Virus record (IMG/VR): IMGVR_UViG_3300009537_002640
Span: 142,496 to 206,495 of that record
Direction: 5' to 3' (one strand)
DNA length: 64,000 bases
This document shows positions 38,483 to 58,897 of this stretch, piece by piece (the first letter of the stretch is position 1; each line of letters opens with the position of its first letter). The notes beneath the pieces were generated by a model. The model saw only the letters and a list, made by a program, of their open reading frames with translations, did no database searches and was not told the origin of the DNA. The translations under genes and the position numbers were made by a program.

Positions 38483-38836
38483 TTAGTATTCTGCTGTCAC
38501 AGCGAAGCCATTTTTAACCAGGTATTCATTTAGTGTTTCTGAGCTATCTGCTAAATATATGTAGGCGATATAGCGTCCGTATTTGCCAGTTTTATCTTTC
38601 TCAGTTTGCACGACAACATCCTTGTTCAATATCAATCGCTTAACTTCTTCTGTAGCAGCTATGCCCTTTTTGTACTCTTCAGAATCCTTTTTAACGCCAT
38701 GAGTTTCAGGAGTATTTATTCCAGCAAGCCTAACCCTTTCTTTCACATAGACTTTTAGCCCCAAATCTAAATCTAGGTCTACAGTGTCTCCGTCGACTAC
38801 ATTATAGCAATGCGCTTTATAAGTATAGAAATCCAT
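38483..38836 (-). CDS. Thermonuclease (SNase-like) protein, 117 aa
   Basis: VVDGDTV, RVRLAGINTPE, DKTGKYGRYIAYIY and LNEYLVKNGFA SNase motifs; GGAGG RBS. Confidence 0.9.
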   Translation of the reverse strand: MDFYTYKAHCYNVVDGDTVDLDLDLGLKVYVKERVRLAGINTPETHGVKKDSEEYKKGIAATEEVKRLILNKDVVVQTEKDKTGKYGRYIAYIYLADSSETLNEYLVKNGFAVTAEY

Positions 38837-38934: not shown

Positions 38935-39960
38935 TTAGCCTGCTGCTACATCCTTACGGCCAACTGCTACACCACGTGGGTTGACAATACCGATTCCGAT
39001 ATTTTCGTTCACGACCCAACCTAGCTTGAGCTGCTTGGGCTCATCAGCTGGGAGAACTTCAATATCTTGACGGATTGGCATTACACCAACGAACTCAGGG
39101 TCAGCAACACCGAAGATAGTTCCAACAGGAACAATCTTAGAAACGATGATGTCTGCGCCCCAAAGGTGTGCAAAAAGACCAGTCTGTAGGATTTCACGCT
39201 GAGTGACCATATCTACCTCTCCACCAGTGCCAGCTGCCTGACCACCGCCAGAGCCCCAGTTTAGAATATCGTTGAACTCAACGATGTTCATTAGGAACTT
39301 GGTAGTTACTAGGTCCCAACGGTCTACCTGAACTTTAATCTCAGAGAGATCGCGCTTTAGAAGACCTGCATCCGCGATATCCTGTGCAGTATTCTCGCCA
39401 CCGAGAGAATCATCACCTGCGAAATCCAGAGCTGCGAAGATGTTGGCATCCTCTTGTGCCTGAATTTCCTGACGTGCTTTCTGCTGGGCACGGTCGATGA
39501 CGTTAAATCTACGACGCTTCACCTCAGAAATACGTACAGTTGGGTTTGAAACAATCTCAAACTCAGGGACTGTTACACGGTCTGCGAAGACACGAGACTC
39601 GGGTGCGGAGCCGTTGCTAGAAATAACAACTGCGCTCACATCGATATCACGGTCATACACAGGCAGTGCACCTTGTGGTAGGGGGTCTACGACTAGAACT
39701 CGACGACCGACGCCTTGGTAATCCAAGTTACGACGAATTGGGTTCGCCATAGCCTGACCAAGAGCAACCTTTCCTTCCTGAGTCATAAGAGCACGACGAA
39801 CTAGCTCGTCCTTCTGCTCCTCTGTGAAAGAAGGCTGACCAGCAAGATTCTGGTTAGCCGATTGGTTCTGCTGGATGATAGACGCAAACTTTACAATCTG
39901 CGCTAACGCATCACGACTATCAACTGCGTTCAACTCCCCATGTGTATTAAACATACTCAT
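38935..39960 (-). CDS. Major capsid protein (HK97-like fold), 341 aa
   Basis: Start refined to ATG 39960 (GGAGG RBS). PIRRNLDYQGVGRRVLVVDPLPQGA..., PEFEIVSNPTV, RRFNVIDRAQQKARQEIQAQED and C-terminal GWVVNENIGIGIVNP match large-phage MCP patterns; position after protease/scaffold and decoration genes; own terminator. Confidence 0.85.
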   Translation of the reverse strand: MSMFNTHGELNAVDSRDALAQIVKFASIIQQNQSANQNLAGQPSFTEEQKDELVRRALMTQEGKVALGQAMANPIRRNLDYQGVGRRVLVVDPLPQGALPVYDRDIDVSAVVISSNGSAPESRVFADRVTVPEFEIVSNPTVRISEVKRRRFNVIDRAQQKARQEIQAQEDANIFAALDFAGDDSLGGENTAQDIADAGLLKRDLSEIKVQVDRWDLVTTKFLMNIVEFNDILNWGSGGGQAAGTGGEVDMVTQREILQTGLFAHLWGADIIVSKIVPVGTIFGVADPEFVGVMPIRQDIEVLPADEPKQLKLGWVVNENIGIGIVNPRGVAVGRKDVAAG

Positions 39961-40114
39961 GAAAGTACCTCCAAAAATTAACCTACGGCTCTTCTGGTCG
40001 TATATTGGTCCGTCCCATAAGAGTCCATAGAGTATCAATTAGTTTTGATTTTCTTCGTCGGTATAACCGACAGGTGCACAACGAAGTCAAATCAGGTCTT
40101 ACAGAGAATCGAAA

Positions 40115-40164: not shown

Positions 40165-40878
40165 TTATGCGTTGTGAGTTGCACCGAGATACTGGAACTT
40201 AACTCGGTCAAATGTCTCAGCAGCACCAACTAGCTTGCCAGGGGTGGTTACTAGAGATCCACTACCTGAGGTTTCTACAAACATACCGATTTTGTCAGCT
40301 GCCGCGACTGCCGCAGTAGACACGCTGAGCTTACCTGAAGTAGGCTCACGGTATAGTAGGTCACCTGGTAGAGGAGTATCATTTAGGCCACCGGGTCCAC
40401 CTGGGCTACCAGATGTATTTGGGTCTAGTGATGCATGTAGAGCATCGCTAGAAACCGCGTACAATCCTGGCTTGTCCCACGCTGTCACCTTACCAGAACC
40501 TGCTGCAGTGTGAGGTCCTAGCAAAGAACCGCCACTGGAAGTTGTGGTAGCAAGACCAACCGGCGTACCGATTAGCTCACCAAACAAGGTGCCATAGTGT
40601 GCCTGACCGTCGTCTAGCAAGTAGAAAAGCTTACGAGTCTCAGTTGCAGTATCGGCGATACGAAGCACTGGACGACTTGCAGTAGGGGTACCTACGTCAA
40701 CTTCGTCTGCAACGTAACCGTCGAGAACATCTGATGCTGCCTTTTCGCTTGCACTGTTGGTGCGAGATGCCTCGTCTAGAGTACCAACCTCACCGCCAAG
40801 GACGTTTGCTAGATCTGTGTCTAGGCAGTCAAACTGACCCAAAGGCTGAAGACCTGGCTGTAATAGATATAATGCCAT
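40165..40878 (-). CDS. Putative capsid decoration/cement protein, 237 aa
   Basis: Start refined to ATG 40878 (GGAGG RBS); immediately upstream of MCP; Gly-rich beta protein; shares GSG[KR]xTxWxxxGx[YF] with the 231-aa ORF. Confidence 0.6.
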   Translation of the reverse strand: MALYLLQPGLQPLGQFDCLDTDLANVLGGEVGTLDEASRTNSASEKAASDVLDGYVADEVDVGTPTASRPVLRIADTATETRKLFYLLDDGQAHYGTLFGELIGTPVGLATTTSSGGSLLGPHTAAGSGKVTAWDKPGLYAVSSDALHASLDPNTSGSPGGPGGLNDTPLPGDLLYREPTSGKLSVSTAAVAAADKIGMFVETSGSGSLVTTPGKLVGAAETFDRVKFQYLGATHNA

Positions 40879-40970
40879 TTTGTTATCCTCCAAATTAGTT
40901 TTTGGGTGGTAAATTCTCACTGACGAAGCAAATTCGATATAGAGAACAACCTTCTTATACTTACATCTAA

Positions 40971-40994: not shown

Positions 40995-42515
40995 TTAGTA
41001 GTTATTTACTATGTTAAATGCTTCAATTAGGGTATTTCGGTCGGTTATTCGGCCATCTGGGGCTACTAAGGCACCAGTCCATTCGTCGGTTTTTGACCTT
41101 TTATTGAAGTCTTGCTCTAATCTTTTCAGGGTCTGTATCGTATTTCGGTCTACTCGTCCAGTTTGCTGTATACCCAAAAGACCTTGTATCTCAGAAACCT
41201 CATTCTTACCAGGCTCTTTAATGGTCATGCCAGGAGTCTTGGATATATCGGCTGAAACACCCAGTCGTTCTGCTAATCCTACCAAAGTATTAGTTGATTC
41301 TTGAACAAAAGTAGTTATCTTCTGACCTAATTGTTTGGCTAATTCTGGATTATCGCTACCCTCTACAACCGTCTGCCAATCTCCAAGAGCGCCGTTGATG
41401 TCATTTATTTCTTTAGACATCTTAGTTACATACATCTGGATTGCCCTTTCTGCATTTTCGCCTTTCAGAGCACTATCTACACCTGCAGAAAGTCTTGCCA
41501 TATCGGATAAGGAGCCTTTAGCTTCATTAACCACTACCCTTCCTCTACCAGATACTTCTAACCTGGATAATTCAGAGGAAAGCCCATTGCTTGCTTTGCT
41601 ATTTTCTGCTGGAGGGTTATCGTCAAACCAACTATATATCTTTAACAACGCTGCCCCACCTGCCAATGCTGCAGCGGACAACCCTAATCTCCTTGCAGTA
41701 TCACCCACAGTTAGACCCATAATTTTCTGTCGAGTGGTTAGCTTTCCACCGCCTGCAATTAGGTCTGCTATTTTGTCTTTTGACATTAGCTTACTTAGTC
41801 GAGCGTTATTCTGAGGATTAGCCAGCCACAATTCCAATTGACGAGATGCCGCAGGATTCCTCTTAAGAGCTATATATTTTCTCACGAATGCCGTGTCAGA
41901 ACCAGATGTGGTTTGCTTCATAATATTCTGTGTCAGATTGAAAGCCTCTTCGTATTTTCCTCGTGCTTGTGCAACACCAGGATGAGTCATTGGGGCATCT
42001 GAGGAGCGTAATACATCAAGAGCACCTCTTACATTACCACTATTAGCATTTTGCCATGCACCAGATAGAGTTTCCATCAACTTTTGATTCTCAGTCACTC
42101 TACCCTGCAAGTCCATCAGCATCTGTTCTGCTTGTTCATGTGCAACTTGGTCTAATTGTTGTGGGTCTACTTTTTTCGTAGGATAAACAGTTCTAGTAAG
42201 CCTTTGAATTTCTCGCTGGTCTTCTAGAATTTCAGCCCTAAGTCTTTGCAAAGCTTTAGATAAGTCGCCGTGTCCAGAGCGAACAAGCTTTGTAACCTCT
42301 GCTCCAGCTTTTTCTCCGAGGTCACTAACCTGTTTAAAATCAGTCACAAGCTTTTCAGCCATTCGGGCAGCACCCTCTGCACTTTCTTCAACTGCTTCTT
42401 TTCCAGCGCGAGCCCACCATTTAGCAGATGCACGAGCAAGATCATCGCTGGCACTACCAAATGCTTTAGCAACAGCTTTAGCTACTGGGCTTACCAACTT
42501 TCTAAGTAGGCCCAC
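40995..42515 (-). CDS. Putative ejection/internal virion protein, 506 aa from GTG (probably the 3' part of a frameshift fusion with 42557-43087)
   Basis: Helical; hydrophobic LGLSAAALAGGAALLKIYSWF; C-terminal PG-binding-like EVSEIQGLLGIQQTGRVDRNT; no RBS before the GTG and the frame stays open upstream past 42590. Confidence 0.7.
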   Translation of the reverse strand: MGLLRKLVSPVAKAVAKAFGSASDDLARASAKWWARAGKEAVEESAEGAARMAEKLVTDFKQVSDLGEKAGAEVTKLVRSGHGDLSKALQRLRAEILEDQREIQRLTRTVYPTKKVDPQQLDQVAHEQAEQMLMDLQGRVTENQKLMETLSGAWQNANSGNVRGALDVLRSSDAPMTHPGVAQARGKYEEAFNLTQNIMKQTTSGSDTAFVRKYIALKRNPAASRQLELWLANPQNNARLSKLMSKDKIADLIAGGGKLTTRQKIMGLTVGDTARRLGLSAAALAGGAALLKIYSWFDDNPPAENSKASNGLSSELSRLEVSGRGRVVVNEAKGSLSDMARLSAGVDSALKGENAERAIQMYVTKMSKEINDINGALGDWQTVVEGSDNPELAKQLGQKITTFVQESTNTLVGLAERLGVSADISKTPGMTIKEPGKNEVSEIQGLLGIQQTGRVDRNTIQTLKRLEQDFNKRSKTDEWTGALVAPDGRITDRNTLIEAFNIVNNY

Positions 42516-42556
42516 AGGTATAGCTGTTTTATGTAGTGGACTTACCCGACTGCTGA

Positions 42557-43087
42557 TTACCCTTCGTCTGTCGGTGCCTCGTCGAAAGGGGGGCCAGCCT
42601 CCTCTGCAAGTAGAGCTTCTAGTTCAGCATCTATGTTGTCTGCAGAATCATTCATGGCACTCAGTGTATCAGACATCTGGGTCACAACTCTTTTCGCTGC
42701 ATCAGTTAGAGAGTTAGCTACATCAGTTGCACCAACTTCTTCTGCAGCTTCAGCCATTTTTACTAGACGAACAACAGTATGAGCATATCTACCCACCAAG
42801 GAGCCGGTTGGGCTTTTATTCAACATTTCTATGAGCTTCTTCTGCTGCTCTACTTGATTTTCTACCAAGCCACCATCACCGCGAGCTTCTGCAACATAGA
42901 CTGGCTCTGGATGAGCCTCCTCTATTATGCTCTTCTCTGGCTGGTCTAGTCTCTTCTTTCGGATAGTTTCTACATCCTCTTGGTAAGGATTAGGCTCTGG
43001 TAATGCGGTCTTCTTAAGACCTAAGACATTAGTTTCAGAAGCAATCTTTAGAAACTCTATCATAACCTCGGAATTTTCCCAATTCAT
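42557..43087 (-). CDS. Internal head protein, 176 aa
   Basis: WENSEVMIEFLKIA N-terminal motif, AHP..VEN motif and helical-hairpin tag, each shared with neighbours. Confidence 0.7.
   Translation of the reverse strand: MNWENSEVMIEFLKIASETNVLGLKKTALPEPNPYQEDVETIRKKRLDQPEKSIIEEAHPEPVYVAEARGDGGLVENQVEQQKKLIEMLNKSPTGSLVGRYAHTVVRLVKMAEAAEEVGATDVANSLTDAAKRVVTQMSDTLSAMNDSADNIDAELEALLAEEAGPPFDEAPTDEG
42584..42603 (-). promoter_or_regulatory. Candidate -1 ribosomal frameshift site (AGGAGG, 7-nt spacer, C CCU UUC)
   Basis: X XXY YYZ heptamer in the 0 frame of the 176-aa ORF; the -1 frame is the open frame of the downstream 506-aa ORF. Confidence 0.5.
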
Positions 43088-43089
43088 AT

Positions 43090-43698
43090 TTAGCTCCTTG
43101 GCCCCATATATCCTTGGGGACCATAATTTTTCGGGTCTAGCGATGGGTCTTTTGGAAGAAACTGAAAAGCACCAGCCATCTCTTCACCCTTCTCTCTGGC
43201 ACCCTCTTCATTTCCACTAGTAAACATATCGTAAATTTCGCCTATCTTGGTAAAGCCAAAAGCAAACAGTAGATACTTAGCTGCACGCCAAAGATTCTTT
43301 AGTAGTGCTCGTGGACTTATAACATATTTCCATATGAACTTAAGCACCACACTTGCGAACGCTTCCTTTACTATCTGGTTTTCCATAGAACTAGCGATTT
43401 TGTTTATTCGTTCATCGTTTAGGTTGGCTGTTGCTGGCATTCCAAAAAGCTGTGTAGTAACACCTTGTTCATCGAGCCATCTACCAAAGTCCTCTAACCC
43501 ATATCCGTAATTAGATAAAACTTTATCAAGGGCAGTTATCATCATTCCGCTCCAACCGAAAACAGATGGGGCGTATGATATCAATCTAAAAAGATTTTGC
43601 CCGGGGCCTTGATCGGTTCTCCACATACCTTGAACCATTTTCTTTATGCCTTCTGCAACAAATGCTCGTTTTGAAATATATCGCATAGCTTTGTCCAT
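43090..43698 (-). CDS. Putative ejection/internal protein with hydrophobic helices, about 202 aa
   Basis: Start refined to 43698 (TAATG coupling); ISKRA and IVKEA motifs; hydrophobic segments. Confidence 0.6.
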   Translation of the reverse strand: MDKAMRYISKRAFVAEGIKKMVQGMWRTDQGPGQNLFRLISYAPSVFGWSGMMITALDKVLSNYGYGLEDFGRWLDEQGVTTQLFGMPATANLNDERINKIASSMENQIVKEAFASVVLKFIWKYVISPRALLKNLWRAAKYLLFAFGFTKIGEIYDMFTSGNEEGAREKGEEMAGAFQFLPKDPSLDPKNYGPQGYMGPRS

Positions 43699-45347
43699 TA
43701 TAGAATCGAATTGCGTCCCTGAAAACGGCCATAGTTCCTCTTTACATAATCTTGTAGCATAGGCATGCTCCAATCAGATGGAGGGGGCAGTCCTCTTGGT
43801 CCCTTAAATACCTGTGACACCAGTCGCACTTGATTCTCTCTACTAAAACCCCTATTAGCTAGCCAAGTTTGTGCCGGTGTTCCATCAATAAACTTGTTAT
43901 TGAGTGCAGCTAAAATTTCTGCACCTGTAGGGTTCCACTTATGAGGCTGCTCTTCAACATCATAGGTTCCGCCACCATACTGAACTCCAGTCTGTCGCTC
44001 TTGTGGAGCTGCACCAGGCTGAGTACTTTGTTGCACTGTCTGTGACAGAGTATTAACCTTTTGGCTTATAGCATTCAATACAGCAGGATTTTTACCAACT
44101 ACCCTATAGTCTGTTTGTGGCACATTCATCCACTGACGCAAACGAGGAGACGAATTCATAAATGTCTCCAGCGCCTTTTGAGTATTTGGTCCATAAATGC
44201 CGTCTTCATTGATTCTGCTTGCGCCAGTACTATATGCCTGGTTAAGATAGTTCAAAGACTGTTGCATGCTTGTTACGGCTGGATTCCTTCTGGACAATTG
44301 TCGCTGAGTCCTCTCTTTCTTAGCCGCTCCAGCTGGCCCCCTAAGAGTAACTTGAGTTCCGTCGCCAAGTGTTAGAGCGCGTTTAGACAACCGCTCCTTA
44401 GAGCTTGCTGTAGTAGCAGCAGTGCCTAAGGCTTTTTCAAACAAGCCATGAAGCATAACTAAACTCTGAACGTTGTTCTTAACATCTTCAAGAGTTGCAC
44501 TCTTTGATGCCAACGCTTCTGCCAAGTTGTATCCTGCTTCTTCGCTCTTATTATCGAATTTAGGAGGTCCGCCAAAGCGCTCAGAAAGCTGGTCATACAT
44601 AGATTTTACTTTCTGCCCAAGCTCAGCAAGGTCCTTATTTAAAGTCTGCCCATATTCCTCGACAGCTTTCTGCATAACGGCCTTTTGTTCAGATGCTGCT
44701 TTTTCTTTTAGCTGTAACATAGCAGTTAGTGTCTTATCAATTGCCTGTTCAGCCTGCTCAGCATCACCAGATATCAAACCACCATAACCCCAATCGGTAA
44801 GTTTTGGCTTCAATTGCGTAGGAAACCACTCCTTAAGGCTAACAAGATACTTTGTAAGTTCTGTTAGAGCATTAAGCTTACCTTTGGTTTGTTGAAGTTT
44901 CTCTTCCTCAGACTCAGGAACATCCTGAACGCCCATAGCCGCCTTAAACTCTTTTAGTTTGCCGGTGACTTTTTCTATCTGAGCTTTGGTTTGTTCGTCC
45001 TTAGGATCTAAGTCCTCAAACCTTTCCACTAAATCATCCAAATTATCATCAGCCAGCTTAGTAGCCTGCCAAACAATAGTAGCTCCAAGAATAAGAGCCA
45101 TTGCCGCCCAGCCTGCTGGTCCTGCAGGAGCAAACATTCCAGCTACTGCAGCGGCTTTACCGGTGACACCAAGAGCTAATGCGGCTTTAGCAGCACCAAT
45201 AACTGCTGCCTCCGTAGCTACATTGCTTAATATAGCTTCGCCCCAGTCAGAACTAGCGGCTTCTTTCACTATAGCAGGGGCCATAGCAATACGCGCATAT
45301 TCCTGCATGATTTCGCTATTTTCAAACTGAGACATATAGCTCTCCAT
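43698..45347 (-). CDS. Putative ejection protein with membrane-like segment and peptidoglycan-binding domain, 549 aa
   Basis: FENSEIMQEYARIA motif; about 45-aa Ala/Gly hydrophobic stretch; VTSMQQSLN...DGIYGPNTQKAL PG-binding-1 signature; LSKRA linker. Confidence 0.7.
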   Translation of the reverse strand: MESYMSQFENSEIMQEYARIAMAPAIVKEAASSDWGEAILSNVATEAAVIGAAKAALALGVTGKAAAVAGMFAPAGPAGWAAMALILGATIVWQATKLADDNLDDLVERFEDLDPKDEQTKAQIEKVTGKLKEFKAAMGVQDVPESEEEKLQQTKGKLNALTELTKYLVSLKEWFPTQLKPKLTDWGYGGLISGDAEQAEQAIDKTLTAMLQLKEKAASEQKAVMQKAVEEYGQTLNKDLAELGQKVKSMYDQLSERFGGPPKFDNKSEEAGYNLAEALASKSATLEDVKNNVQSLVMLHGLFEKALGTAATTASSKERLSKRALTLGDGTQVTLRGPAGAAKKERTQRQLSRRNPAVTSMQQSLNYLNQAYSTGASRINEDGIYGPNTQKALETFMNSSPRLRQWMNVPQTDYRVVGKNPAVLNAISQKVNTLSQTVQQSTQPGAAPQERQTGVQYGGGTYDVEEQPHKWNPTGAEILAALNNKFIDGTPAQTWLANRGFSRENQVRLVSQVFKGPRGLPPPSDWSMPMLQDYVKRNYGRFQGRNSIL

Positions 45348-46969
45348 TAGATATTGATGAATTGCTTTATTTGATCAGGGGTTAGGCTTTTAACTGTTCC
45401 TGCAAACTCCTGCTCTAATTTGCCCATTGCAGCTTCTGGGGTAAAGAAACGAATCATAGATTTATAAGATTCTCTAGCCCTAGTACGCAAAGCTTGTTCT
45501 AATTCTGGTGCTCGGCGAAGAGGAAGTCTAGGAAATCTTTTTTGAAACGTCTGAAGCATCAACTGCTCTGCCGCTTGTGGACTCGGACCCTGTGGTTGAG
45601 CCTCCCCCGGCGCCGTCTCTTCTTTCTTTGCTGTTCCAGCACCCTGATTCTGTACTGCATCAAATATAGCTCTAAAGCCAGCCTTACTCTTTACGGCTGC
45701 CCATGCATCTGGATACTTTTGGCGTAACACGTTAGCAAGCTGCCTATCAAAAGGTTGATTTGCTTTCGGCTGTAAGCCCACCATAGTTCTAAGTCGATTT
45801 TGCAGCTGAGTTAGCCTCATCTTTTTCTTATCTTGAGTAGTAGCAGTACCAGATTCATCGAGATTAATTTCTCCTGCTCCAGCAGCCTCCCAACCCTCTG
45901 GGGTTGTAGGAAACCCTGTTTGAGGGTCAACCTTCTGCTGAGTAGTTGCTACTCCAGAATCTTGCTGTTGTCTGCGTTGAGCTAACATTTGTTGTTCTGC
46001 TTGGAGATTAGGAGACCATTGTGCAACCATTGGCTGCACAACACTAGGTAGGTCAGGAGCATTTTTGCCCCATCGAGATTGAAGTTTTTGTAGTGCACTC
46101 ATTGCTTCAGTCAAAGTAGGCATTGAGGTTCCTTGCCACTCACGAATTACCATAGGCTTATTGAATCTCCCACCCAAATCAGCTTGGTTTAGAGCATCCA
46201 ATACCTGCTTCTTAAATTGTTGTGCCGCAGGACTCGCAGCAACCTTTACTTTTTTTTTTAACAGTGAGTCAACACGGTCAGCCGCCTTAACGTACCCAAG
46301 CTTATCCAGTCGGTCAGCTAGATTTAGAAGAGCTGCGTAAGTTCCCTTGGGCATGCTTAACGCAACCTCTACATCCTTCTTTTGCTGCTCGACGATGGTC
46401 TCTACCAAATTCTCATCAGTTTTGCTGTGAGTAAGTTCGGTCCTAGTGCCACCACCCGGATGAGCCTTATCTACTAGCTGTTCGCCAGTCTCGCCAGATA
46501 CATCATAAAGCTTTTCTTCTGCGGTTTTCATATTCTCCATCTCTGCGGATTGTTGTTTGGTTAGGTCCAACTCAGGAAGTTTGGCGTGGGTAAGAGGCGT
46601 AACCCAAGCGTTTGTTACTTCTGTGTGAAACTTTTGAGCTGCAGCCTGTACTTCTGGATTATTAGCGTATGCTTTGGTCCAATGAGCAACTACGGCGTCA
46701 CGAATTCGACCCAAAAATAAGCCAAGCCTCTGATTAGGAATCTTGCCATAGTATTTGGCATGAAACTTATTCATAGCCTGAGTAGCATCCATAAATGGAT
46801 TCTTTGAGCGCATGAGCTGATTAATGGTTTGTCTCATCTCATTAGCAGCTGGACCAGCTTCTTTCAACAGCTCCTCATCTGAAGCTTGTTTGACTAAGCC
46901 CTTGTTAGCAGCAATGTTTGCAAACTCTCTCATCACTTCGCTATCATCAAAATTGTAATTGTGTCGCAT
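45347..46969 (-). CDS. Putative internal/ejection protein, 540 aa
   Basis: FDDSEVMREFANIA motif, AHPGGG-TELTHSKTD motif, helical-hairpin tag, Gln-rich linkers, degenerate PG-binding-like segment. Confidence 0.7.
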   Translation of the reverse strand: MRHNYNFDDSEVMREFANIAANKGLVKQASDEELLKEAGPAANEMRQTINQLMRSKNPFMDATQAMNKFHAKYYGKIPNQRLGLFLGRIRDAVVAHWTKAYANNPEVQAAAQKFHTEVTNAWVTPLTHAKLPELDLTKQQSAEMENMKTAEEKLYDVSGETGEQLVDKAHPGGGTRTELTHSKTDENLVETIVEQQKKDVEVALSMPKGTYAALLNLADRLDKLGYVKAADRVDSLLKKKVKVAASPAAQQFKKQVLDALNQADLGGRFNKPMVIREWQGTSMPTLTEAMSALQKLQSRWGKNAPDLPSVVQPMVAQWSPNLQAEQQMLAQRRQQQDSGVATTQQKVDPQTGFPTTPEGWEAAGAGEINLDESGTATTQDKKKMRLTQLQNRLRTMVGLQPKANQPFDRQLANVLRQKYPDAWAAVKSKAGFRAIFDAVQNQGAGTAKKEETAPGEAQPQGPSPQAAEQLMLQTFQKRFPRLPLRRAPELEQALRTRARESYKSMIRFFTPEAAMGKLEQEFAGTVKSLTPDQIKQFINI

Positions 46970-46982
46970 GATAATACCCCTA

Positions 46983-48014
46983 TTATCGGAAACGAGCTAG
47001 TCGCTTCTCTAGTAATTGTGCCGCCGAATTTATATCCTTGGCCCGACCCTTCTGAATCATTTGTTGTAACACCCTCATTAAGGTCCCTGTATCTTTATAG
47101 GGTCTTGGTACCTTTGGGTTTTGAAATACCTTCTGTCGTATTGCTTGTGCCGCCTGCTGTAATTGAGCAGGATTGGCCTGCTGTGCCGGTCTTTGCTGTT
47201 GAACAGGTTGTCGTGGAGCTTGCTGAGTCTGCTGTTGCTGCTTTCTAGCTTGCCATTGCTGTTGCATTCTTTGCTGAGGTGCAGTATTACGAGGGGGATT
47301 TTTCTCCATTTGGCCCATCTCATCCCATATATCTGCGCCCTTAGCTATAGATTCTTTGATTCCACGAATAACTTTCTCAACCTCATATGCCTCTGAATGC
47401 CTTCCTTCTGCACCTAGACGATATGCAGTGTCCTCTAGACGATTCAGAAGTATCAAACTAAGCCCTTCAGGACCAGAACCTTCTTCTGGAACACTTACAT
47501 CATGTGCCTCATCGCTAGAGCAACGAGGGCAGTCACAATCAGGCCCACATGTACACTTGCCTTCTTCACAACCGCAGTCACATTTTGCCTTAGCATCCTC
47601 AGCGTCTTGTTCCATTAGCTCTTTTAGCTTTTCTTCAGCGTCTTCCACTGTTTCTTCATCGGGCTCTTTCTTTGCAGGAACTTCATAAACCAATCTTTCA
47701 TCTTCGCTCTTCTCTTTGAGCTTTGGCAAACTACTCAAATCATAGAAATCCCCAGCGACTTTTTCAAAATCACCAGGTAAAATGACTGATTTAAGTTGGC
47801 GATGAAAGTATGCCATGTCATTTGAACCAGCTGTTTGTCCAAGGGCAACACGATGACGCATTTCTTTGATGAAATCGCCTAGTAATGTATTAACCTCTTT
47901 GCTAGAGGCCAACTTTTGTGCTACAATACGCTGCCTTTCATCATCAAGTAGATGAGCTACTATATTGATAAAAGTGTCCTTGTCGGATGCATGTATATAG
48001 TCAAAAAGATTCAT
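46983..48014 (-). CDS. Internal head protein with Cys cluster and Gln-rich segment, 343 aa
   Basis: CDCGCEEGKCTCGPDCDCPRC; degenerate hairpin tag; Q-rich linker. Confidence 0.65.
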   Translation of the reverse strand: MNLFDYIHASDKDTFINIVAHLLDDERQRIVAQKLASSKEVNTLLGDFIKEMRHRVALGQTAGSNDMAYFHRQLKSVILPGDFEKVAGDFYDLSSLPKLKEKSEDERLVYEVPAKKEPDEETVEDAEEKLKELMEQDAEDAKAKCDCGCEEGKCTCGPDCDCPRCSSDEAHDVSVPEEGSGPEGLSLILLNRLEDTAYRLGAEGRHSEAYEVEKVIRGIKESIAKGADIWDEMGQMEKNPPRNTAPQQRMQQQWQARKQQQQTQQAPRQPVQQQRPAQQANPAQLQQAAQAIRQKVFQNPKVPRPYKDTGTLMRVLQQMIQKGRAKDINSAAQLLEKRLARFR

Positions 48015-48023
48015 CGTTGCTCC

Positions 48024-48719
48024 TTAGAACCATAAAAATTCAAGAGTTTGGTCAATTCCACTCGGTGGCCCTGTAACCATTGCTATACCAGGATGACTTG
48101 CAGTTGGTGGTGCTGTAGTCAGCTTTCCCTCTGCATTGACAAACAATTGGGCATTTACCACATATCGTTGTCTTGTATCAAACTGGTCTGTCTGAAAGAT
48201 TCCTCTTGCGAACCAAATTGTCATTCTTCCGCTACCTACTGTAGTGTTGTCTCCAGGAATATTTGGTATTCTGTAGACATAGCTAACAATCACACGTACA
48301 GAGTCCGGAATCTGGTCGCCGTCTGAATCATAATTTAGCTCTGTGCCCGCTGGAGCTGTAATCACCCCATTTACATCGTTGAGCGAAAGCCCCTCGACAT
48401 CAGCAACAAAGCTGTTTCTAACCACATTAGCAAATCTAAGAGTTTGCATTTCATCTTTGGCGGATACATAAGTGTACCCATCAGCAGCTAAAACACCAAC
48501 CGCTGGTATAATAACCACTTCGTCTGTTACTGGTGCTGTAAAAGCCGAAGTATTAATGTCATCTATAATACCAAACGGTGCTGTGCCATCCGAAACGCCA
48601 CAAACAATTTCATTGCCTATAACTTTTAGCTGAGCTATTTGCCCTGGTTGAAACTCCGCAGTGGGGTCAACCGGAAAGCTTAGAGGCAAAGTATTACCTA
48701 CTTGAATCAGTCTTAACAT
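48024..48719 (-). CDS. Putative capsid decoration/cement protein (paralogue of 40165-40878), 231 aa
   Basis: FQPGQIAQL...PFGIIDD and GSGRMTIWFARGIF...LFVNAEGKLTT pattern typical of beta-tulip-like decoration proteins. Confidence 0.6.
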   Translation of the reverse strand: MLRLIQVGNTLPLSFPVDPTAEFQPGQIAQLKVIGNEIVCGVSDGTAPFGIIDDINTSAFTAPVTDEVVIIPAVGVLAADGYTYVSAKDEMQTLRFANVVRNSFVADVEGLSLNDVNGVITAPAGTELNYDSDGDQIPDSVRVIVSYVYRIPNIPGDNTTVGSGRMTIWFARGIFQTDQFDTRQRYVVNAQLFVNAEGKLTTAPPTASHPGIAMVTGPPSGIDQTLEFLWF

Positions 48720-48748: not shown

Positions 48749-49096
48749 TTATTCAGTTTCTGCTTGCAAATCGCGAACGATTACACGCAACGCTTCATCA
48801 ACTGCTGAAGAAGCATCATCTGCACCAGCCTCATCCAACTCTGTAGCAAGCTTGGTAAGTTCCTGAAGAACACCTAGAACGACAGCTTTCTTTTTCTTCT
48901 TGTCATCCTTTTTGTCTTCTTTCTTCTTATCCTTCTTATCTTCCTTGTCGTCCTTCTTTTTCATAAAAGGAGGAAGCTTCTTATCATCCTTGTCGTCGTC
49001 CTTCTCATCATCTTCCTTTGCAGCAGTAACCATTAGCCCCTGCTTGCTCAAGAGATTGTGAAGTTCCAACATCATTTCATCGCCAGATCGTGACAT
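48749..49096 (-). CDS. Small K/D-rich head protein with hairpin tag, about 115 aa
   Basis: Start refined to 49096 (GGAG RBS); K/D/E low-complexity tract, then LTKLATELDEAGADDASSAVDEAL. Confidence 0.65.
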   Translation of the reverse strand: MSRSGDEMMLELHNLLSKQGLMVTAAKEDDEKDDDKDDKKLPPFMKKKDDKEDKKDKKKEDKKDDKKKKKAVVLGVLQELTKLATELDEAGADDASSAVDEALRVIVRDLQAETE

Positions 49097-49097
49097 G

Positions 49098-50760: not shown

Positions 50761-53700
50761 TTAGCGCCAATTAAGCTGTGCCAACTGCTCATTTAGGCTT
50801 GGGGCATTAACTGGTTCTGGACTTGCGGTAACAGTCATTGATTGACCGGCACCATCAGCTCCTACACGGGGTAGGGAACCGCCCTTCCTAGAATTGTAGT
50901 TAGCTACTACACGCTTATTTGACTCAAAAGCTGCGTCATCAAAGTTCATCAGCTGGTCAACGTATCCCTCAAGGGATGCCTGAGTAGAAGCGATTAGCCC
51001 CTTCTCCTGAGCCTGGAGACCTACTGCATACGCTCTGCGTAGCTTGGTCTTGTACTCTCCGTTGTCAGCTTCCTTCTTCTTAGAAGCAAACTCTTTGCTC
51101 AAGTCTGCACCGAAGCTACCAGTGTCAGGACCTTGTGCCCAGAACTTCTTCCAGTAAGAAGCTGCTGCTGAGTCAACCTTACCCTCAGCCACCAACCTAT
51201 CAACATCTTCAGCCTTGAGTGCGCCCTTAACAATTGCCTCTTGAATGAGAGCAGCTGCCTCACGCACATTTCTTGGGCCAGATTCAGCGACATCTCGCAT
51301 TACATCGTGAATCTCAGAAATGGTTTCAACATGAGCACCGTCTGTCTTGGTATGAGTTAGCTCAGTTGTAGTACCCTTTCCGCCTGGATGAGCCTCAAAG
51401 TACTCTTTCTGAGTTGCATTCTCTGCCTTGCCCAAATCCAACTCATACTTTCCAAGGATGTCACCTGCTTGAGCAAGAAGAGCATCACGCTCAGCCTTGC
51501 GAGCAGCCATTACAGAATCTAGAGCTTCGTCAACTGCGAAGTCACCATCATCTGCCATCATTGCCCCACCACATGACTCATCATGTGCATGGTCCTCGGC
51601 ACACATTGGTGCATCTGCATCATCCTCGTCTTTCTTCTTCTTTTTCTCATCCTTCTCATATTCATCTTCTTCATCCTCGTCGGACTCTTTATCCTTTGCG
51701 AGGTCAGGATGCGTAAGCTCGCCCTCTGGACCTTTTTCTTGCTTCTCTTCCTGCAGAAGCTTCATTAGAGAAGCCTCATCAGCATCAGTTAGAGCATAGT
51801 CCATCTCGTCGCCCATACCCATCATGTCCATATCACCCATAGCCTTAGCTAGAAGTGCAGCACGATTTTGAGCACGGACCCTTAGAGCTTGTTCTAGAAG
51901 TTCAGCAGCCTTCTTCTCGGCGTCAGACTTTTCGGACTTCTTATCTTCCTTCTCGTCCTCATCATCTTCATCCTCGTCTTTCTTCTTTTTCTTAGCTGCT
52001 TCTTTCTTCTTCTTATCCTCTTTGTCATCCTCATCTTTGTCTTTCTTGTCTGCCTTTTCGTCTTCCTTATCATCGTCTTTCTTCTTGGCAGCTTCTTTTT
52101 TCTTATCTTTCTTCTTCTTATCCTCTTTATCATCCTCATCTTCATCGTCGTCTTTCTTCTTCTTAGCCAAGACAACTTCAGCTTGAGCAAGTAGAGTCTC
52201 GCTGTCGGCTAGAGCTTGAACAGCTGCACTAAGAACACGGCCCTTAGTTTCACCATCAAGGTCTTCTGCCTTATCAAGAGCTTCGCTCACAAGAGCTAGC
52301 TCATCAGCAGACTCATCTAGGAGGGAGTGAACCTCCATAGCCTCATCGCGGAACGCTAGAGTTTGTTCCATTGGACTTTCGGAACCACCTTCGCCTTCCT
52401 CGTCGACCTTAACTTCAATGTCGACTAGTTTCTCACCACCCTCATCAACAGCCTTGCGGATGTCGTCTAGAGCAGTTTCAATCTTAGTGAGGCCAGCTTC
52501 TACCTTGCCCTTGAGATCAGGCTCATCTTCCTTCTTCTCTGGTGCAGGTGCTTCACCCTCAGGAGCTGCAGGAGCAGCTTCTGGTGCAGGTGCGTCTCCG
52601 CCTGGAGCTGGTGCTCCACCTGCTAGAGGGTCAGCTCCACCGGGAGCCAAAGGATCTTGAGCACCCTTTAGGAGATATGAAACCTCATCAAAGCCTTCGG
52701 TGCGGATATGGCGAATAATATCCTTTCCGTAGTCCTTGGAGCTTAGATAATCCCAGTTCTCATCAAGCTGGTCATCAAAGATTTCCTTGCCGGTTGCAGT
52801 TAGAATCAACTTGTCACCAGCATACACATCCCAACGGGATGCATCCTTGACTAGATTGCCTTGGTCATCAGCGACCTTGGTAAACTTTGCACGAAGGCGG
52901 GCACGCAACCACATCTTCTTTACTTTCTCGTCGCCAGGAACCATACCATCGGTACCGCCCATGTCGTAGATGCCTTGTAGGTGCTTATCTTCGTTATCGC
53001 GGATTTTGTCCGCTTCCTCTTTTGGATACTTTTCCTTGCCAGGGGTTGGCTCATTGATACCACCACCGCCTAGCCAGTAAGCGCGACGTCGTAGTCTACG
53101 CTCCTGTAGTTGAGCTTCAGTTAGCTTTCCATCTTCAGCTGCATCCTTGTCAGTCTTCTGAACCTGCTCTAGCAGTGCTTGACGGCGTAGTTTACGCTCC
53201 TCAATCTCTGCTTTCTTCTTGTCGGCTTTACCGCCGCCAAGATTGCGGGTTTCCCACGTTCTTCCTTCATCGCCTGGGTGAAGACCTTCGGATCCAGTTT
53301 CTAATGGCTCGCCAACCATTTGCTTATCTTCAGTGTCACGGATTTTATCCGCTTCTTCCTTCTCATACTTAGGCTTACCTGGAGTAGGCTCATTAATGCC
53401 GCCTCCACCTAGCCAATATGCTCGACGTGCTTTGGCACGGGCACGTAATCTCGCAGAATTCATATTGTCGTCCTCCTTAGAGACTGTTTTTAACTCATTG
53501 AATGATTTACTTAGTTTTTCTATCTTGGATCGAAGGAGACGTATTTCATTAAAAAGAACACCCAGGTTTCCGTCTCCCTCTAGACTAGCCAATCTCTGAC
53601 TAGGCTCGACTGATATTGGTGTAGTGGTAGTGCGATACGTACCTTCACCGTTGCCAGCCATTGGACTTACACTTGGCTCTGACCCACCACCAGTAGCTGG

Positions 53701-54789
53701 TAAAGCAGGAGGAGCCTCGTCTGTTTCAGTATTGCCGATGCCGAATTTGGCAGCTAATACCTCTTCGATTTTTTCTTTTAGAGCAGGGTTGGTTACAGCC
53801 TTCAATGCCGCGACCAATTCACCCATATCCATATTTTCTAGACCATGTATGGGTGAGCTTTTAGCCTCTACTCTTTTAGTCTTTTGTTCGAGTTTCATTA
53901 GCGTGTTAAGCTTAGTTTGCATTTCGTTGATGTTGTCAGCAAGCGCTTGTAGTTCAGTTGGGTTTACACAGGCACCAACTAGCAACTCGTCAATACGCTC
54001 TTGTTTTTGTTCAGCGTAATTCTGCAAGCTTGCGACTATTTGTCGGATTTTTGCCAGACCATCAGCGCCATTAACTACGAGGCTTAGCTCGATTGGGCTT
54101 AGGTCTAGGTTCACTTCGCCATAATTTGTGCGTCCACGAACATGATGACAATAGTCTCGTTCGGTTCTCGCTACATGGCCACATTCGGTGCATACGGAGC
54201 GACCGACTGCCGTACCCATTGATACGCAATTAGCATATCCGGTTTCTACTTTGCGTGCTAGGTCAGGGTAATTCTTCCTATCTAACGCAAATAAAGCATG
54301 AACCCTCTTAAACTTAGGGTCATAGTAAGTATCGATTATTATTCCACGAATGCCGTCTACGCTATCACTCTTGTGGTCTTTGCATAGTGGCTTTCCTACC
54401 CAGTTCTTGTAGGCTTTTAGCAGCTCATCTTCAGGAAAAATGTCACCATTAGCATTCTTGTAGGGCTTTAGTCCATCAGGAGATTCCCATTTCACAGAGT
54501 GCTCGTTGCCCTTTACCTTAATAGGCACGAAAGACCCCTTAGCTGGCTTACCATTAGAAGCTAGAACGGGCTCACCTGTATCCTGGTCTATCAAACATGC
54601 TTCAGCAGCATGCATCATAATAGCGTGGCCATAAAGAAAGTCACTAGCTCTTGGAGCAATCCTCTTTAGCTTCTTGGCTAACTTAACAAACCTTTTGGCG
54701 ATTTGTTCGTCCGCTAGAGCTTCTTTCGGTGTCATCAGATTTGTGTCTGGTGAAAAGCTTAGATTCTCTCCGATTTTCCTAATAGCCAT
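50761..54789 (-). CDS. Prohead (maturation) protease fused to a large scaffold region, 1342 aa
   Basis: N-terminal HK97/herpes-type protease signatures: NGDIFPEDEL, KPLCKDH (H139), VSMG (S190), CTECG..YCHH zinc site, IELSLV..GAD; then about 1000 aa of acidic, K/D/E-rich and coiled-coil sequence. Confidence 0.85.
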   Translation of the reverse strand: MAIRKIGENLSFSPDTNLMTPKEALADEQIAKRFVKLAKKLKRIAPRASDFLYGHAIMMHAAEACLIDQDTGEPVLASNGKPAKGSFVPIKVKGNEHSVKWESPDGLKPYKNANGDIFPEDELLKAYKNWVGKPLCKDHKSDSVDGIRGIIIDTYYDPKFKRVHALFALDRKNYPDLARKVETGYANCVSMGTAVGRSVCTECGHVARTERDYCHHVRGRTNYGEVNLDLSPIELSLVVNGADGLAKIRQIVASLQNYAEQKQERIDELLVGACVNPTELQALADNINEMQTKLNTLMKLEQKTKRVEAKSSPIHGLENMDMGELVAALKAVTNPALKEKIEEVLAAKFGIGNTETDEAPPALPATGGGSEPSVSPMAGNGEGTYRTTTTPISVEPSQRLASLEGDGNLGVLFNEIRLLRSKIEKLSKSFNELKTVSKEDDNMNSARLRARAKARRAYWLGGGGINEPTPGKPKYEKEEADKIRDTEDKQMVGEPLETGSEGLHPGDEGRTWETRNLGGGKADKKKAEIEERKLRRQALLEQVQKTDKDAAEDGKLTEAQLQERRLRRRAYWLGGGGINEPTPGKEKYPKEEADKIRDNEDKHLQGIYDMGGTDGMVPGDEKVKKMWLRARLRAKFTKVADDQGNLVKDASRWDVYAGDKLILTATGKEIFDDQLDENWDYLSSKDYGKDIIRHIRTEGFDEVSYLLKGAQDPLAPGGADPLAGGAPAPGGDAPAPEAAPAAPEGEAPAPEKKEDEPDLKGKVEAGLTKIETALDDIRKAVDEGGEKLVDIEVKVDEEGEGGSESPMEQTLAFRDEAMEVHSLLDESADELALVSEALDKAEDLDGETKGRVLSAAVQALADSETLLAQAEVVLAKKKKDDDEDEDDKEDKKKKDKKKEAAKKKDDDKEDEKADKKDKDEDDKEDKKKKEAAKKKKKDEDEDDEDEKEDKKSEKSDAEKKAAELLEQALRVRAQNRAALLAKAMGDMDMMGMGDEMDYALTDADEASLMKLLQEEKQEKGPEGELTHPDLAKDKESDEDEEDEYEKDEKKKKKDEDDADAPMCAEDHAHDESCGGAMMADDGDFAVDEALDSVMAARKAERDALLAQAGDILGKYELDLGKAENATQKEYFEAHPGGKGTTTELTHTKTDGAHVETISEIHDVMRDVAESGPRNVREAAALIQEAIVKGALKAEDVDRLVAEGKVDSAAASYWKKFWAQGPDTGSFGADLSKEFASKKKEADNGEYKTKLRRAYAVGLQAQEKGLIASTQASLEGYVDQLMNFDDAAFESNKRVVANYNSRKGGSLPRVGADGAGQSMTVTASPEPVNAPSLNEQLAQLNWR

Positions 54790-58886: not shown

Positions 58887-58897
58887 TTGAAAGCTCC

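What the first reader, a model, noticed from the sequence alone, without database searches (positions are those of the whole stretch)
40995..46969. Putative ejectosome cluster: shared N-terminal motif, membrane-like helices and peptidoglycan-binding domains
Seen: three ORFs begin with [FW]-[DE]-[DN]-S-E-[VI]-M-x-E-[FY]-x-x-I-A (FDDSEVMREFANIA, FENSEIMQEYARIA, WENSEVMIEFLKIA). The 549-aa, 506-aa and 202-aa ORFs have Ala/Gly-rich hydrophobic stretches. PG-binding-1-like segments occur at ~44153-44295 (DGIYGPNTQKAL), ~41125-41215 and, degenerate, ~45720-45815. Established: T7 gp14-16 and P22 gp7/16/20 are ejected from the head to build a trans-envelope conduit. Inference: an uncharacterised conduit anchored on the cell wall.
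Basis: partly seen in the sequence, partly recalled or inferred. Interest (0 to 1): 0.65.

Follow-up and report, generated by a model that had tools for sequence, protein, structure and literature searches.

The report
Tagged head-internal proteins of jumbo phage
Five neighbouring genes in the head-assembly region of an uncultured 206-kb contractile-tailed phage encode proteins, three of which start with the same short helix; this tag most likely brings them into the capsid, as known tags do in phage T4, so the finding is a new variant of a known idea and not a proven cell-envelope channel.

Summary
The shared N-terminal motif is real. It occurs exactly three times in the 206-kb genome, always at an ORF start. 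It is also conserved at the N-terminus of 1-3 head-module ORFs in nearly every related metagenomic phage examined. The cluster lies between a prohead protease-scaffold fusion gene and the decoration-like and major capsid genes of a phage G-like jumbo myophage.

Two tagged proteins (540 aa, 176 aa) carry a second module ending in a confidently predicted helix-turn-helix hairpin. The C-terminal part of the protease-scaffold protein has the same module, and it is found in about 1,780 metagenomic protein clusters.

The hydrophobic stretches are only marginally membrane-grade in the window but clearly so in orthologues. One peptidoglycan-binding-like segment (549-aa protein) is supported just below threshold. 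The 540-aa copy is a degenerate remnant, and the 506-aa copy is only a partial weak match.

Best reading: these are prohead core or ejection proteins, recruited by an N-terminal tag like the T4 capsid targeting sequence and by a scaffold-like docking hairpin. An envelope-directed role after ejection is possible.

No homology to T7 or P22 ejectosome proteins was found, and the phage has a tail sheath. Packaging, cleavage and membrane insertion are all untested. This is a new variant of a known kind, of moderate interest.

The parts
50761..54789 (-). 1342-aa prohead protease-scaffold fusion. Residues 1-260 are the protease domain, with invariant C-x-D-H139 and S190-M-G and a Cys/His insert. A long charged, repeat-rich tail follows. 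Residues about 1117-1216 carry the AHP/hairpin module.
   Evidence: phrog_18299 head maturation protease, E 1.3e-15. 35% identity to phage G gp19, which is described as the head maturation protease. Alignment A3. Module shared with the 540-aa and 176-aa ORFs.
45347..46969 (-). 540-aa tagged protein: N-terminal tag, AHP/hairpin module, Gln-rich region, degenerate PG-binding-like remnant.
   Evidence: (homologues in 44 loci)
46910..46951 (-). N-terminal tag of the 540-aa protein (residues 7-20)
   Evidence: 33.8 bits
46220..46492 (-). AHP/hairpin module of the 540-aa protein (residues about 160-250)
   Evidence: blastp to the 1342-aa protein E 2.3e-8 and to the 176-aa protein E 9e-7; iterative search
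45720..45815 (-). Degenerate remnant of a PG-binding-like segment in the 540-aa protein (residues about 385-416)
   Evidence: No profile match in the window. Orthologues in L004, L005 and L002 keep the D-G-x-x-G-P-x-T signature at the same place.
43698..45347 (-). 549-aa tagged protein (probable true start 45335): tag, Ala/Gly-rich hydrophobic region, helical bundle, PG_binding_1-like domain, small C-terminal domain.
   Evidence: 11-member family A1; AF2 model, mean pLDDT 66
45285..45326 (-). N-terminal tag of the 549-aa protein
   Evidence: 23.7 bits. Mean identity across the family is 58% in the tag and 36% overall.
45069..45239 (-). Ala/Gly-rich hydrophobic region of the 549-aa protein (residues 37-93)
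   Evidence: KD19 maxima 1.59 and 1.48. Conserved in kind but variable in length across the family. AF2 pLDDT below 50.
44160..44285 (-). PG_binding_1-like segment of the 549-aa protein (residues 355-396)
   Evidence: Pfam E 1e-3, 19.7 bits, cut-off 23. PHROG endolysin matches. SleC 9h68 at E 0.006. Foldseek SleC probability 0.72 but E 2.3. pLDDT 78-89.
43090..43698 (-). 202-aa untagged protein with weakly hydrophobic segments (ATG overlaps the stop of the 549-aa ORF). It is the orthologue of the two-TM ORFs of relatives.
42557..43087 (-). 176-aa tagged protein: tag plus AHP/hairpin module. It is the most widely conserved member, and it is fused to the 506-aa protein in L002 and L005.
   Evidence: Homologues in 62 loci
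43040..43081 (-). N-terminal tag of the 176-aa protein (residues 3-16), followed by A-S-E at residues 16-18
   Evidence: 31.1 bits
42668..42940 (-). AHP/hairpin module of the 176-aa protein (residues about 50-140)
   Evidence: AF2 model: hairpin H53-74/H77-100 of the modelled piece, pLDDT about 95.
40995..42515 (-). 506-aa untagged protein (GTG start) with one Ala/Gly-rich hydrophobic helix (residues 277-295; 41631-41687) and a C-terminal partial PG_binding_1-like match (41125-41215). It is the C-terminal half of a fused protein in relatives.
40165..40920 (-). 251-aa conserved protein directly upstream of the capsid gene, in the position of the phage G decoration gene
   Evidence: Homologues in 76 loci. 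Phage G gp26 decoration gene precedes the capsid gene. Function inferred from position only.
38935..40038 (-). Major capsid protein
   Evidence: phrog_2522 E 1.2e-78; 53.5% identity to phage G gp27
48024..48719 (-). 231-aa highly conserved head-module protein that precedes the tagged genes in relatives
   Evidence: 55-74% identity in 38 loci. Atlas gives only a weak lead to the lambda gpD decoration family, score 0.83.

Best explanation
The cluster encodes the internal (core or ejection) proteins of the head of an uncultured jumbo myophage related to phage G. Three of them (540, 549 and 176 aa) begin with a 17-20-residue amphipathic helix. The family consensus is [W/F]-x-x-S-x-V-M-x-E-F-x-K-I-A-x-E-x-G-L-I.

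The helix most likely acts as a prohead-incorporation or assembly signal, like the T4 capsid targeting sequence and the shared N-termini of SPN3US gp53 and gp54. It would bind a common partner in the scaffolding core, or bundle the tagged proteins together. It may then be removed by the prohead protease encoded at the head of the module.

The 540-aa and 176-aa proteins have a second module: A-H-P, then L-V-E-N/T, E-Q-Q-x-K, and a helix-turn-helix hairpin. The C-terminal part of the protease-scaffold protein carries it too. It is best read as the element that docks these proteins to the capsid shell or scaffold, as the shared C-termini of lambda C and Nu3 and the C-terminal hairpin of the P22 scaffolding protein do.

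The hydrophobic segments (549, 202 and 506 aa) and the PG-binding-like domain suggest that some of these proteins act on the host envelope after release from the head.

Shown: gene context, the tag and its conservation, the second module, and the domain signals.
Inferred: packaging, cleavage, ejection and envelope action.
For: (1) Context. All genes are co-oriented and tightly packed or overlapping, in the order protease-scaffold, 462, 130, 231, 343, [540, 549, 202, 176, 506], 251, capsid. Phage G has the same protease-to-capsid order, with a virion-associated peptidoglycan hydrolase in between.

(2) Tag. It occurs three times in the genome, always N-terminal. In relatives, 63 ORFs pass at E<=1e-3. 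All 60 in related loci are on the capsid strand, 1.6-9.3 kb upstream of the capsid gene. 32 of 34 loci with enough upstream DNA have at least one. Among the 150 best database proteins that carry the second module, 95 have the tag, and 93 of these start it within residues 1-14. In five whole related records of 211-442 kb the tag occurs only in these head-module ORFs. In the 549-aa family the tag is more conserved than the rest of the protein (58% against 36%).

(3) Logo. S 93%, V 88%, M 74%, E 86%, F 71%, K 63%, I 78%, A 76%, and E 61% at the position that gives A-x-E. The hydrophobic positions are spaced 4,3,4,3. A-x-E is the cleavage motif of the SPN3US protease, and gp53 may be cut at residue 12. 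The T4 tag ends in I-A-E and is cut there.

(4) Second module. It is shared with the protease-scaffold tail. It is found in 1,780 clusters at E<=1e-3. The hairpin is modelled at pLDDT about 95.

(5) Precedent. SPN3US gp47 is an ejection protein with a propeptide followed by a transmembrane helix, and gp53 and gp54 share identical N-termini.

(6) Hydrophobic segments are membrane-grade in orthologues. The PG-binding signal passes the Pfam cut-off in one relative, L019, at 27.9 bits.
Against: - There is no protein-level evidence that any of these proteins is in a virion, is cleaved or is ejected. No cultured relative carries them, and phage G lacks both motifs.
- The protease cannot be assigned to the T4 gp21 family by sequence, so cleavage after Glu is only an analogy. 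The 540-aa and 549-aa proteins lack Glu at the consensus A-x-E position.
- Unlike T4, the tag is not found on genes elsewhere in the genome, so it is not a general cargo tag.
- The similarity to the T4 tag rests on about six residues and needs a gap.
- Hydrophobicity in the window is marginal.
- The PG-binding matches in the window are below threshold.
- No fold match supports any enzymatic or channel function.
Confidence: 0.55

Rival explanations
1. These proteins form a T7 gp14-16 or P22 gp7/16/20-type ejectosome: head-stored proteins that, on ejection, build a trans-envelope DNA conduit anchored on peptidoglycan.
For: Position in the head module. Hydrophobic segments are membrane-grade in orthologues. 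PG-binding-like segments. Giant myophages do eject head proteins, one with a TM helix.
Against: No profile similarity to any ejectosome family. A tail sheath homologue is present, so the contractile tail tube already spans the envelope. No lytic transglycosylase or other catalytic domain was found. The window's own hydrophobic stretches are below usual TM thresholds. No channel-like fold was found.
Confidence: 0.15
2. The proteins are pure assembly scaffold or core proteins. The tagged proteins are paralogous scaffolding components that are degraded and expelled during maturation and never reach the host. The tag mediates scaffold-scaffold contacts and the hairpin mediates coat contacts.
For: The module is shared with the protease-scaffold fusion. 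Hairpin-only copies occur in other small acidic head-region ORFs. The tag is confined to head-module genes. Long helical regions are predicted.
Against: This does not explain the conserved hydrophobic segments, the PG-binding-like domains or the folded C-terminal domain of the 549-aa family. The size and number of these proteins exceed what a scaffold needs, given the 1342-aa protease-scaffold.
Confidence: 0.2
3. It is a lysis or envelope-remodelling cassette embedded in the structural region. The 549-aa protein would be a signal-anchored wall-binding protein, with membrane partners (202, 506 aa) acting at the end of infection.
For: PHROG endolysin matches over the PG-binding region. N-proximal hydrophobic region.
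Against: No catalytic domain. The tag is shared with non-hydrophobic proteins that carry the protease-scaffold docking module. Synteny inside the head module is strictly conserved in dozens of relatives.
Confidence: 0.05

Closest known systems
T4 capsid targeting sequence (CTS) of internal proteins IPI-III and Alt
   Same: A short N-terminal sequence is shared by otherwise dissimilar head proteins. It holds an aromatic residue after Glu and ends in I-A-(x)-E, and it lies in a phage with a prohead protease.
   Different: The tag here is longer (about 17-20 residues against 10). It aligns with the T4 tag only with a gap, so homology is not shown. It is confined to 1-3 genes inside the head module and not spread over the genome. 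Cleavage and targeting are untested. The protease is not assignable to the gp21 family by sequence.
SPN3US / phiKZ ejection (E) proteins: gp53/gp54 with identical N-termini, gp47 with propeptide plus TM helix
   Same: Jumbo myophage. Paralogous head proteins share a conserved N-terminus while the rest has diverged. A hydrophobic segment follows directly after the N-terminal signal. An A-x-E motif lies near residues 12-18.
   Different: No sequence similarity. The capsid lineage is different (phage G-like). The SPN3US propeptides are mostly over 100 residues. No proteomics exists for this clade.
Lambda C/Nu3 and P22 gp8-type scaffold docking elements
   Same: A module ending in a helix-turn-helix hairpin is shared between the protease-bearing protein and other head-module proteins. 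In lambda, the protease and the scaffold share a C-terminus. In P22, a C-terminal hairpin binds coat protein (both from general knowledge).
   Different: Here the module is a separate paralogous domain and not a nested in-frame product. It lies N-proximal or internal in the tagged proteins. It has an invariant A-H-P and V-E signature of unknown role. Foldseek found no specific match.
T7 gp14/gp15/gp16 and P22 gp7/gp16/gp20 ejectosomes
   Same: Several neighbouring genes next to the capsid gene, hydrophobic segments, and a cell-wall-related domain.
   Different: No homology. The phage is a myovirus. There is a wall-binding-like domain only, with no wall-degrading domain.
Phage G head module (gp19 protease to gp27 capsid, with gp22 hydrolase found in virions)
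   Same: Closest cultured capsid (53.5% identity). Same protease-to-capsid order, with a wall-directed protein in between.
   Different: Phage G has neither the tag nor the AHP/hairpin module. Its protease is not fused to a long scaffold. Its wall-directed protein is an enzyme.

Membership tests
T7 gp14-16 / P22 gp7-16-20 ejectosome proteins | Sequence or profile similarity to the known ejection-protein families | tested here: not met
   No Pfam or PHROG hit of that kind for any of the five proteins. No significant structural match in PDB or BFVD.
T7 gp14-16 / P22 gp7-16-20 ejectosome proteins | Short-tailed virion that needs an extensible conduit | tested here: not met
   The 1195-aa ORF at 33600-37187 matches tail sheath phrog_15433, E 3.9e-14.
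T7 gp14-16 / P22 gp7-16-20 ejectosome proteins | Stored in the head and ejected into the envelope | not testable with these tools
   Needs virion proteomics, fractionation or cryo-ET.
CTS-tagged internal head proteins (T4 type) | Short conserved N-terminal sequence shared by otherwise dissimilar proteins | tested here: met
CTS-tagged internal head proteins (T4 type) | Tag removed by the prohead protease at a Glu that ends the tag | tested here: inconclusive
   A-x-E is at the expected place in 61% of 113 unique N-termini, and in the 176-aa protein but not the 540- or 549-aa proteins. The cleavage itself is not testable here.
CTS-tagged internal head proteins (T4 type) | Tag also marks cargo genes scattered through the genome | tested here: not met
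   Only head-module ORFs carry it in the window's genome and in five related records of 211-442 kb.
CTS-tagged internal head proteins (T4 type) | Protease of the T4 gp21 family | tested here: inconclusive
   A head maturation protease is present (phrog_18299), with conserved His and Ser. No Pfam or PDB sequence match assigns its family.
PG_binding_1 (PF01471) | Score at or above the Pfam gathering cut-off (23 bits) | tested here: not met
   549-aa protein 19.7 bits. 506-aa C-terminus 14.8 bits, partial. 540-aa protein none. A relative's large ORF (L019) reaches 27.9 bits.
PG_binding_1 (PF01471) | D-G-x-x-G-x-x-T-x-x-A signature within a three-helix unit | tested here: met
   This holds for the 549-aa family only. 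D382, Y385, G386, P387 and T389 are invariant. Helices are modelled at pLDDT 78-89. SleC PG-binding region at E 0.006.
Scaffold-type coat-docking hairpin | C-terminal helix-turn-helix hairpin shared with the protease or scaffold protein | tested here: met
   Hairpin at pLDDT about 95. Module shared by the 1342-, 540- and 176-aa proteins.
Scaffold-type coat-docking hairpin | Binds the capsid protein | not testable with these tools
   No capsid or scaffold partner was tested: the single complex job went to the tag-protease pair, not to this module. Needs pull-down or a procapsid structure.

The most novel reading that the evidence does not exclude
A contractile-tailed jumbo phage clade carries a dedicated three- to five-protein machine. 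Its subunits are bundled through their shared N-terminal helices and parked on the capsid interior by a scaffold-like hairpin. After ejection through the tail tube, the machine inserts Gly/Ala-rich fusion-peptide-like segments into the host membrane and holds on to peptidoglycan. This would be a myovirus counterpart of the podovirus ejectosome, built from unrelated parts.
Probability: 0.15. Interest if true: 0.75.

Novelty: new variant of a known kind. Interest (0 to 1): 0.5.

Why it matters
Head-internal and ejected proteins of jumbo phages are hard to recognise from sequence. How they are sorted into the capsid is known in detail only for T4 and partly for SPN3US and phiKZ.

A compact, strongly conserved N-terminal tag, together with a docking module present in about 1,780 metagenomic protein clusters, would give a sequence rule for finding such proteins in a large uncultured clade related to phage G. 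It could also serve as a portable tag for loading foreign proteins into large capsids.

If the membrane- and wall-directed modules act after ejection, the clade would show how a contractile-tailed phage supplements its tail with envelope-active cargo.

Tried and rejected
- Complex prediction of the protease domain (A3) with the first 60 residues of the 176-aa protein (A4) gave no answer: score 0.01 against a mark of 0.32. This is not evidence for or against binding.
- Foldseek searches of the 549-aa model against PDB and BFVD, and of the module model against PDB, gave nothing significant.
- Atlas feature searches gave only weak leads.
- blastn of the cluster, and tblastn of the 176-aa and 231-aa proteins, against GenBank phages found nothing.
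- The viral-contig scan seeded with the 549-aa protein found nothing. The scan seeded with the capsid protein did work.
- No sequencing run was listed for the cluster, so no reads were laid.
- A fourth, degenerate tag at the start of the 130-aa ORF, and a tag-like stretch near the N-terminus of the protease, looked suggestive by eye. Neither is supported by the profile.
- Phage G has neither motif.
- Weak profile matches of the 549-aa hydrophobic and coiled-coil region to paramyxovirus fusion proteins (E 0.08-0.5) are treated as compositional only.
The analysis was redone from coordinates.
Full report
WHAT THE WINDOW IS

The window is the last 64 kb of a single 206,495-bp virus record. Every sizeable ORF lies on the minus strand, and no tRNA gene is present.

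- The 367-aa ORF at 38935-40038 is the major capsid protein (phrog_2522, E 1.2e-78). Its closest cultured relative is gp27 of the 497-kb Bacillus phage G, at 53.5% identity.
- A 1195-aa ORF downstream matches a tail sheath family, so the phage is a myovirus.
- The 1342-aa ORF at 50761-54789 starts with a head maturation protease domain. It matches phrog_18299 at E 1.3e-15 and is 35% identical to phage G gp19, which the literature treats as the head maturation protease. An alignment with ten relatives shows invariant C-x-D-H139 and S190-M-G, plus a Cys/His insert. Neither Pfam nor PDB sequence searches assign a protease family.
- The rest of this protein is long, charged, repeat-rich and scaffold-like.

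The finding therefore sits inside a head-morphogenesis module. The order is protease-scaffold, 462, 130, 231, 343, then 540, 549, 202, 176, 506, then 251, then capsid. Stops and starts are overlapping or nearly abutting.

THE N-TERMINAL MOTIF

The motif is real and specific.

- In a six-frame scan of the whole genome, the strict pattern occurs three times only. Each copy lies a few residues after the start of the 540-, 549- and 176-aa ORFs.
- It never occurs in 200 shuffles.
- A profile built from relatives scores the three copies at 24-34 bits. The maximum for 3,000 shuffled N-termini is 8.3.
- The three DNA copies differ at synonymous positions, so selection acts on the peptide.

Eighty related loci were retrieved from IMG/VR with the capsid protein.

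- 63 ORFs carry the motif at E<=1e-3.
- All 60 in related loci are on the capsid strand, 1.6-9.3 kb upstream of the capsid gene, with the motif at the ORF start.
- 32 of 34 loci with more than 7.5 kb of upstream DNA have one to three such ORFs.
- In five whole related records of 211-442 kb the motif is found nowhere else.

A logo over 113 unique N-termini gives [W/F]-x-x-S-x-V-M-x-E-F-x-K-I-A-x-E-x-G-L-I:

| Residue | Frequency |
|---|---|
| S | 93% |
| V | 88% |
| M | 74% |
| E | 86% |
| F | 71% |
| K | 63% |
| I | 78% |
| A | 76% |
| second E | 61% |

The hydrophobic positions are spaced 4,3,4,3. This is the pattern of an amphipathic docking helix (my reading of the logo). In the 549-aa family the tag is the best-conserved part, at 58% mean identity against 36% overall.

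A SECOND SHARED MODULE

The 540-aa protein (residues about 160-250), the 176-aa protein (about 50-140) and the C-terminal part of the protease-scaffold protein (about 1117-1216) share a module of about 95 residues.

- Pairwise blastp gives E 2.3e-8 and 9e-7, and iterative searches confirm the match.
- H and E are invariant and A, P and V nearly so, within A-H-P ... V-E-N/T ... E-Q-Q-x-K ... P-T-G. A helix-turn-helix hairpin follows. AlphaFold models the hairpin at pLDDT about 95.
- Foldseek finds no specific relative for it, as expected for a hairpin.
- A profile of the module finds 1,780 clusters at E<=1e-3 and 950 at E<=1e-10 among 1.84 billion representatives. None of the ten clusters looked up carried an informative phage or virion name.
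- Of the best 150 hits, 95 also carry the N-terminal tag, and 93 of these start it within residues 1-14. None of the 21 hits with the module at the very end of a long protein (the protease-scaffold type) carries the tag.
- Hairpin-only copies occur in the 130-aa ORF and in three ORFs further upstream.

I read this module as the element that parks these proteins on the scaffold or shell. The precedents are the shared C-terminus of lambda C and Nu3 and the coat-binding hairpin of the P22 scaffolding protein (established knowledge; not tested here).

HYDROPHOBIC SEGMENTS

In the window these are weak.

| Protein | Best 19-residue Kyte-Doolittle mean |
|---|---|
| 549 aa | 1.59 |
| 506 aa | 1.38 |
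| 202 aa | 1.32 |

The orthologous segments in relatives reach 1.7-2.2, at conserved positions.

- The 549-aa family has a Gly/Ala-rich stretch of 40-60 residues directly after the tag. AlphaFold leaves it unstructured, so there is no sign that it is buried in a soluble fold.
- The 202-aa protein is the orthologue of two-TM ORFs of distant relatives.
- The 176- and 506-aa proteins form one fused protein in L002 and L005.

PEPTIDOGLYCAN-BINDING-LIKE SEGMENTS

- 549-aa protein: the segment has the invariant D-G-x-Y-G-P-x-T signature. Pfam gives E 1e-3, below the cut-off. Endolysin PHROGs match over the same region. A family profile matches the PG-binding part of SleC at E 0.006, and there is a weak structural echo.
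- Relatives: a large ORF in L019 passes the Pfam cut-off, and large ORFs carry up to three copies.
- 540-aa protein: the window copy has lost the signature, although its orthologues keep it.
- 506-aa protein: the C-terminus gives only a partial match, E 0.034.

No catalytic wall-degrading domain was found anywhere in the cluster.

MECHANISM

The best-supported reading is that these are prohead core or ejection proteins.

Precedents from the literature:
- T4 internal proteins and Alt carry a 10-19-residue N-terminal targeting sequence that binds the scaffolding core. The prohead protease cuts it off after I-A-E.
- SPN3US gp53 and gp54 have identical N-termini while the rest has diverged. Its protease cuts after A-x-E, possibly at residue 12 of gp53. 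Its ejection protein gp47 has a transmembrane helix right after its propeptide.

The tag here ends in A-x-E in most family members and in the 176-aa protein, but not in the 540- or 549-aa proteins. Cleavage therefore remains an inference.

The 549-aa protein has the tag but no hairpin module. The tag may therefore bundle the tagged proteins together, or bind a common core partner, while the hairpin module provides the anchor. The untagged 202- and 506-aa proteins may ride along through hydrophobic contacts.

A role on the host envelope after ejection is suggested only by the hydrophobic and wall-binding-like modules. In phage G, a wall hydrolase encoded in the head module was detected in virions.

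- There is no homology to T7 or P22 ejection proteins.
- The phage has a sheath.
- No channel-like or lytic fold was found.

A pure-scaffold model and a lysis-cassette model are weaker, for the reasons given under rivals.

LIMITS

- There is no cultured relative with these genes, and phage G lacks both motifs.
- No sequencing run was listed.
- The one complex prediction gave no answer.
- The similarity to the T4 tag covers about six residues with a gap. It is a lead, not evidence of common descent.

Noticed in passing
window 48749-49141, 56401-57177, 58257-58994, 59231-59629 (minus strand): The hairpin part of the AHP/hairpin module (L-x-x-L-A-x-x-L-D-x-x-G-x-x-x-x-A-x-x-L-D) recurs without the tag in the 130-aa ORF (one copy), the 258-aa ORF (two), the 245-aa ORF (two) and the 132-aa ORF (one, E 0.01). 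This suggests a larger family of small hairpin proteins around the head module.
   Followed up: partly
window 50761-54789 (minus strand): The protease-scaffold protein holds two near-identical copies of a unit of about 35 residues (R-R-A-Y-W-L-G-G-G-G ... E-E-A-D-K-I-R-D), at roughly residues 455-492 and 569-606. It also has long Lys/Asp/Glu low-complexity tracts that resemble the 130-aa ORF.
   Followed up: no
window 42516-42556 and loci L002, L005: The 176-aa and 506-aa ORFs are separated by 41 bases containing stop codons, and they lie in different frames. The 506-aa ORF has only a GTG start with no obvious ribosome-binding site. In L002 (652 aa) and L005 (754 aa) the two are one protein; in L004, L006 and L007 they are split.
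   Followed up: partly
window about 47517-47579 (343-aa ORF, minus strand): A dense Cys cluster (nine Cys in about 21 residues, metallothionein-like), followed later by a Gln-rich tract. No family match.
   Followed up: no
window 38483-38836 (minus strand): A staphylococcal-nuclease homologue (PF00565, E 2.8e-16) is encoded directly downstream of the capsid gene.
   Followed up: no
window 59598-63470 and 57550-58260 (minus strand): A 1290-aa protein combines a eukaryotic-type topoisomerase IB core (E 7.5e-31) with a 2'-5' RNA ligase-like domain. A 236-aa trypsin-like peptidase lies nearby, upstream of the head module.
   Followed up: no
window 5801-17236 (minus strand): A single 3811-aa ORF with only a weak endosialidase tail-spike-like match (E 4e-4). 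Presumably a giant fibre or tail protein.
   Followed up: no
window 48024-48719 and 40165-40920 (minus strand): The 231-aa and 251-aa head-module proteins are weakly similar to each other (E 0.033). The Atlas gives a weak lead from the 231-aa protein to the lambda gpD decoration family (score 0.83). They may be two decoration or cement proteins.
   Followed up: partly
protein P0162 (database hit, not in the window): A 2024-aa DUF4347 protein of Chlorobium chlorochromatii matches the central part of the module profile in 11 separate stretches (E 1e-22). This is either a repeat-driven artefact or a bacterial repeat related to the A-H-P ... V-E-N core.
   Followed up: no
549-aa family profile, positions 68-176: The Gly/Ala-rich segment plus the following helix gives repeated weak matches (E 0.08-0.5) to the fusion-peptide and heptad-repeat-A region of paramyxovirus F proteins. 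Probably compositional, but the layout is reminiscent of a fusion peptide.
   Followed up: no
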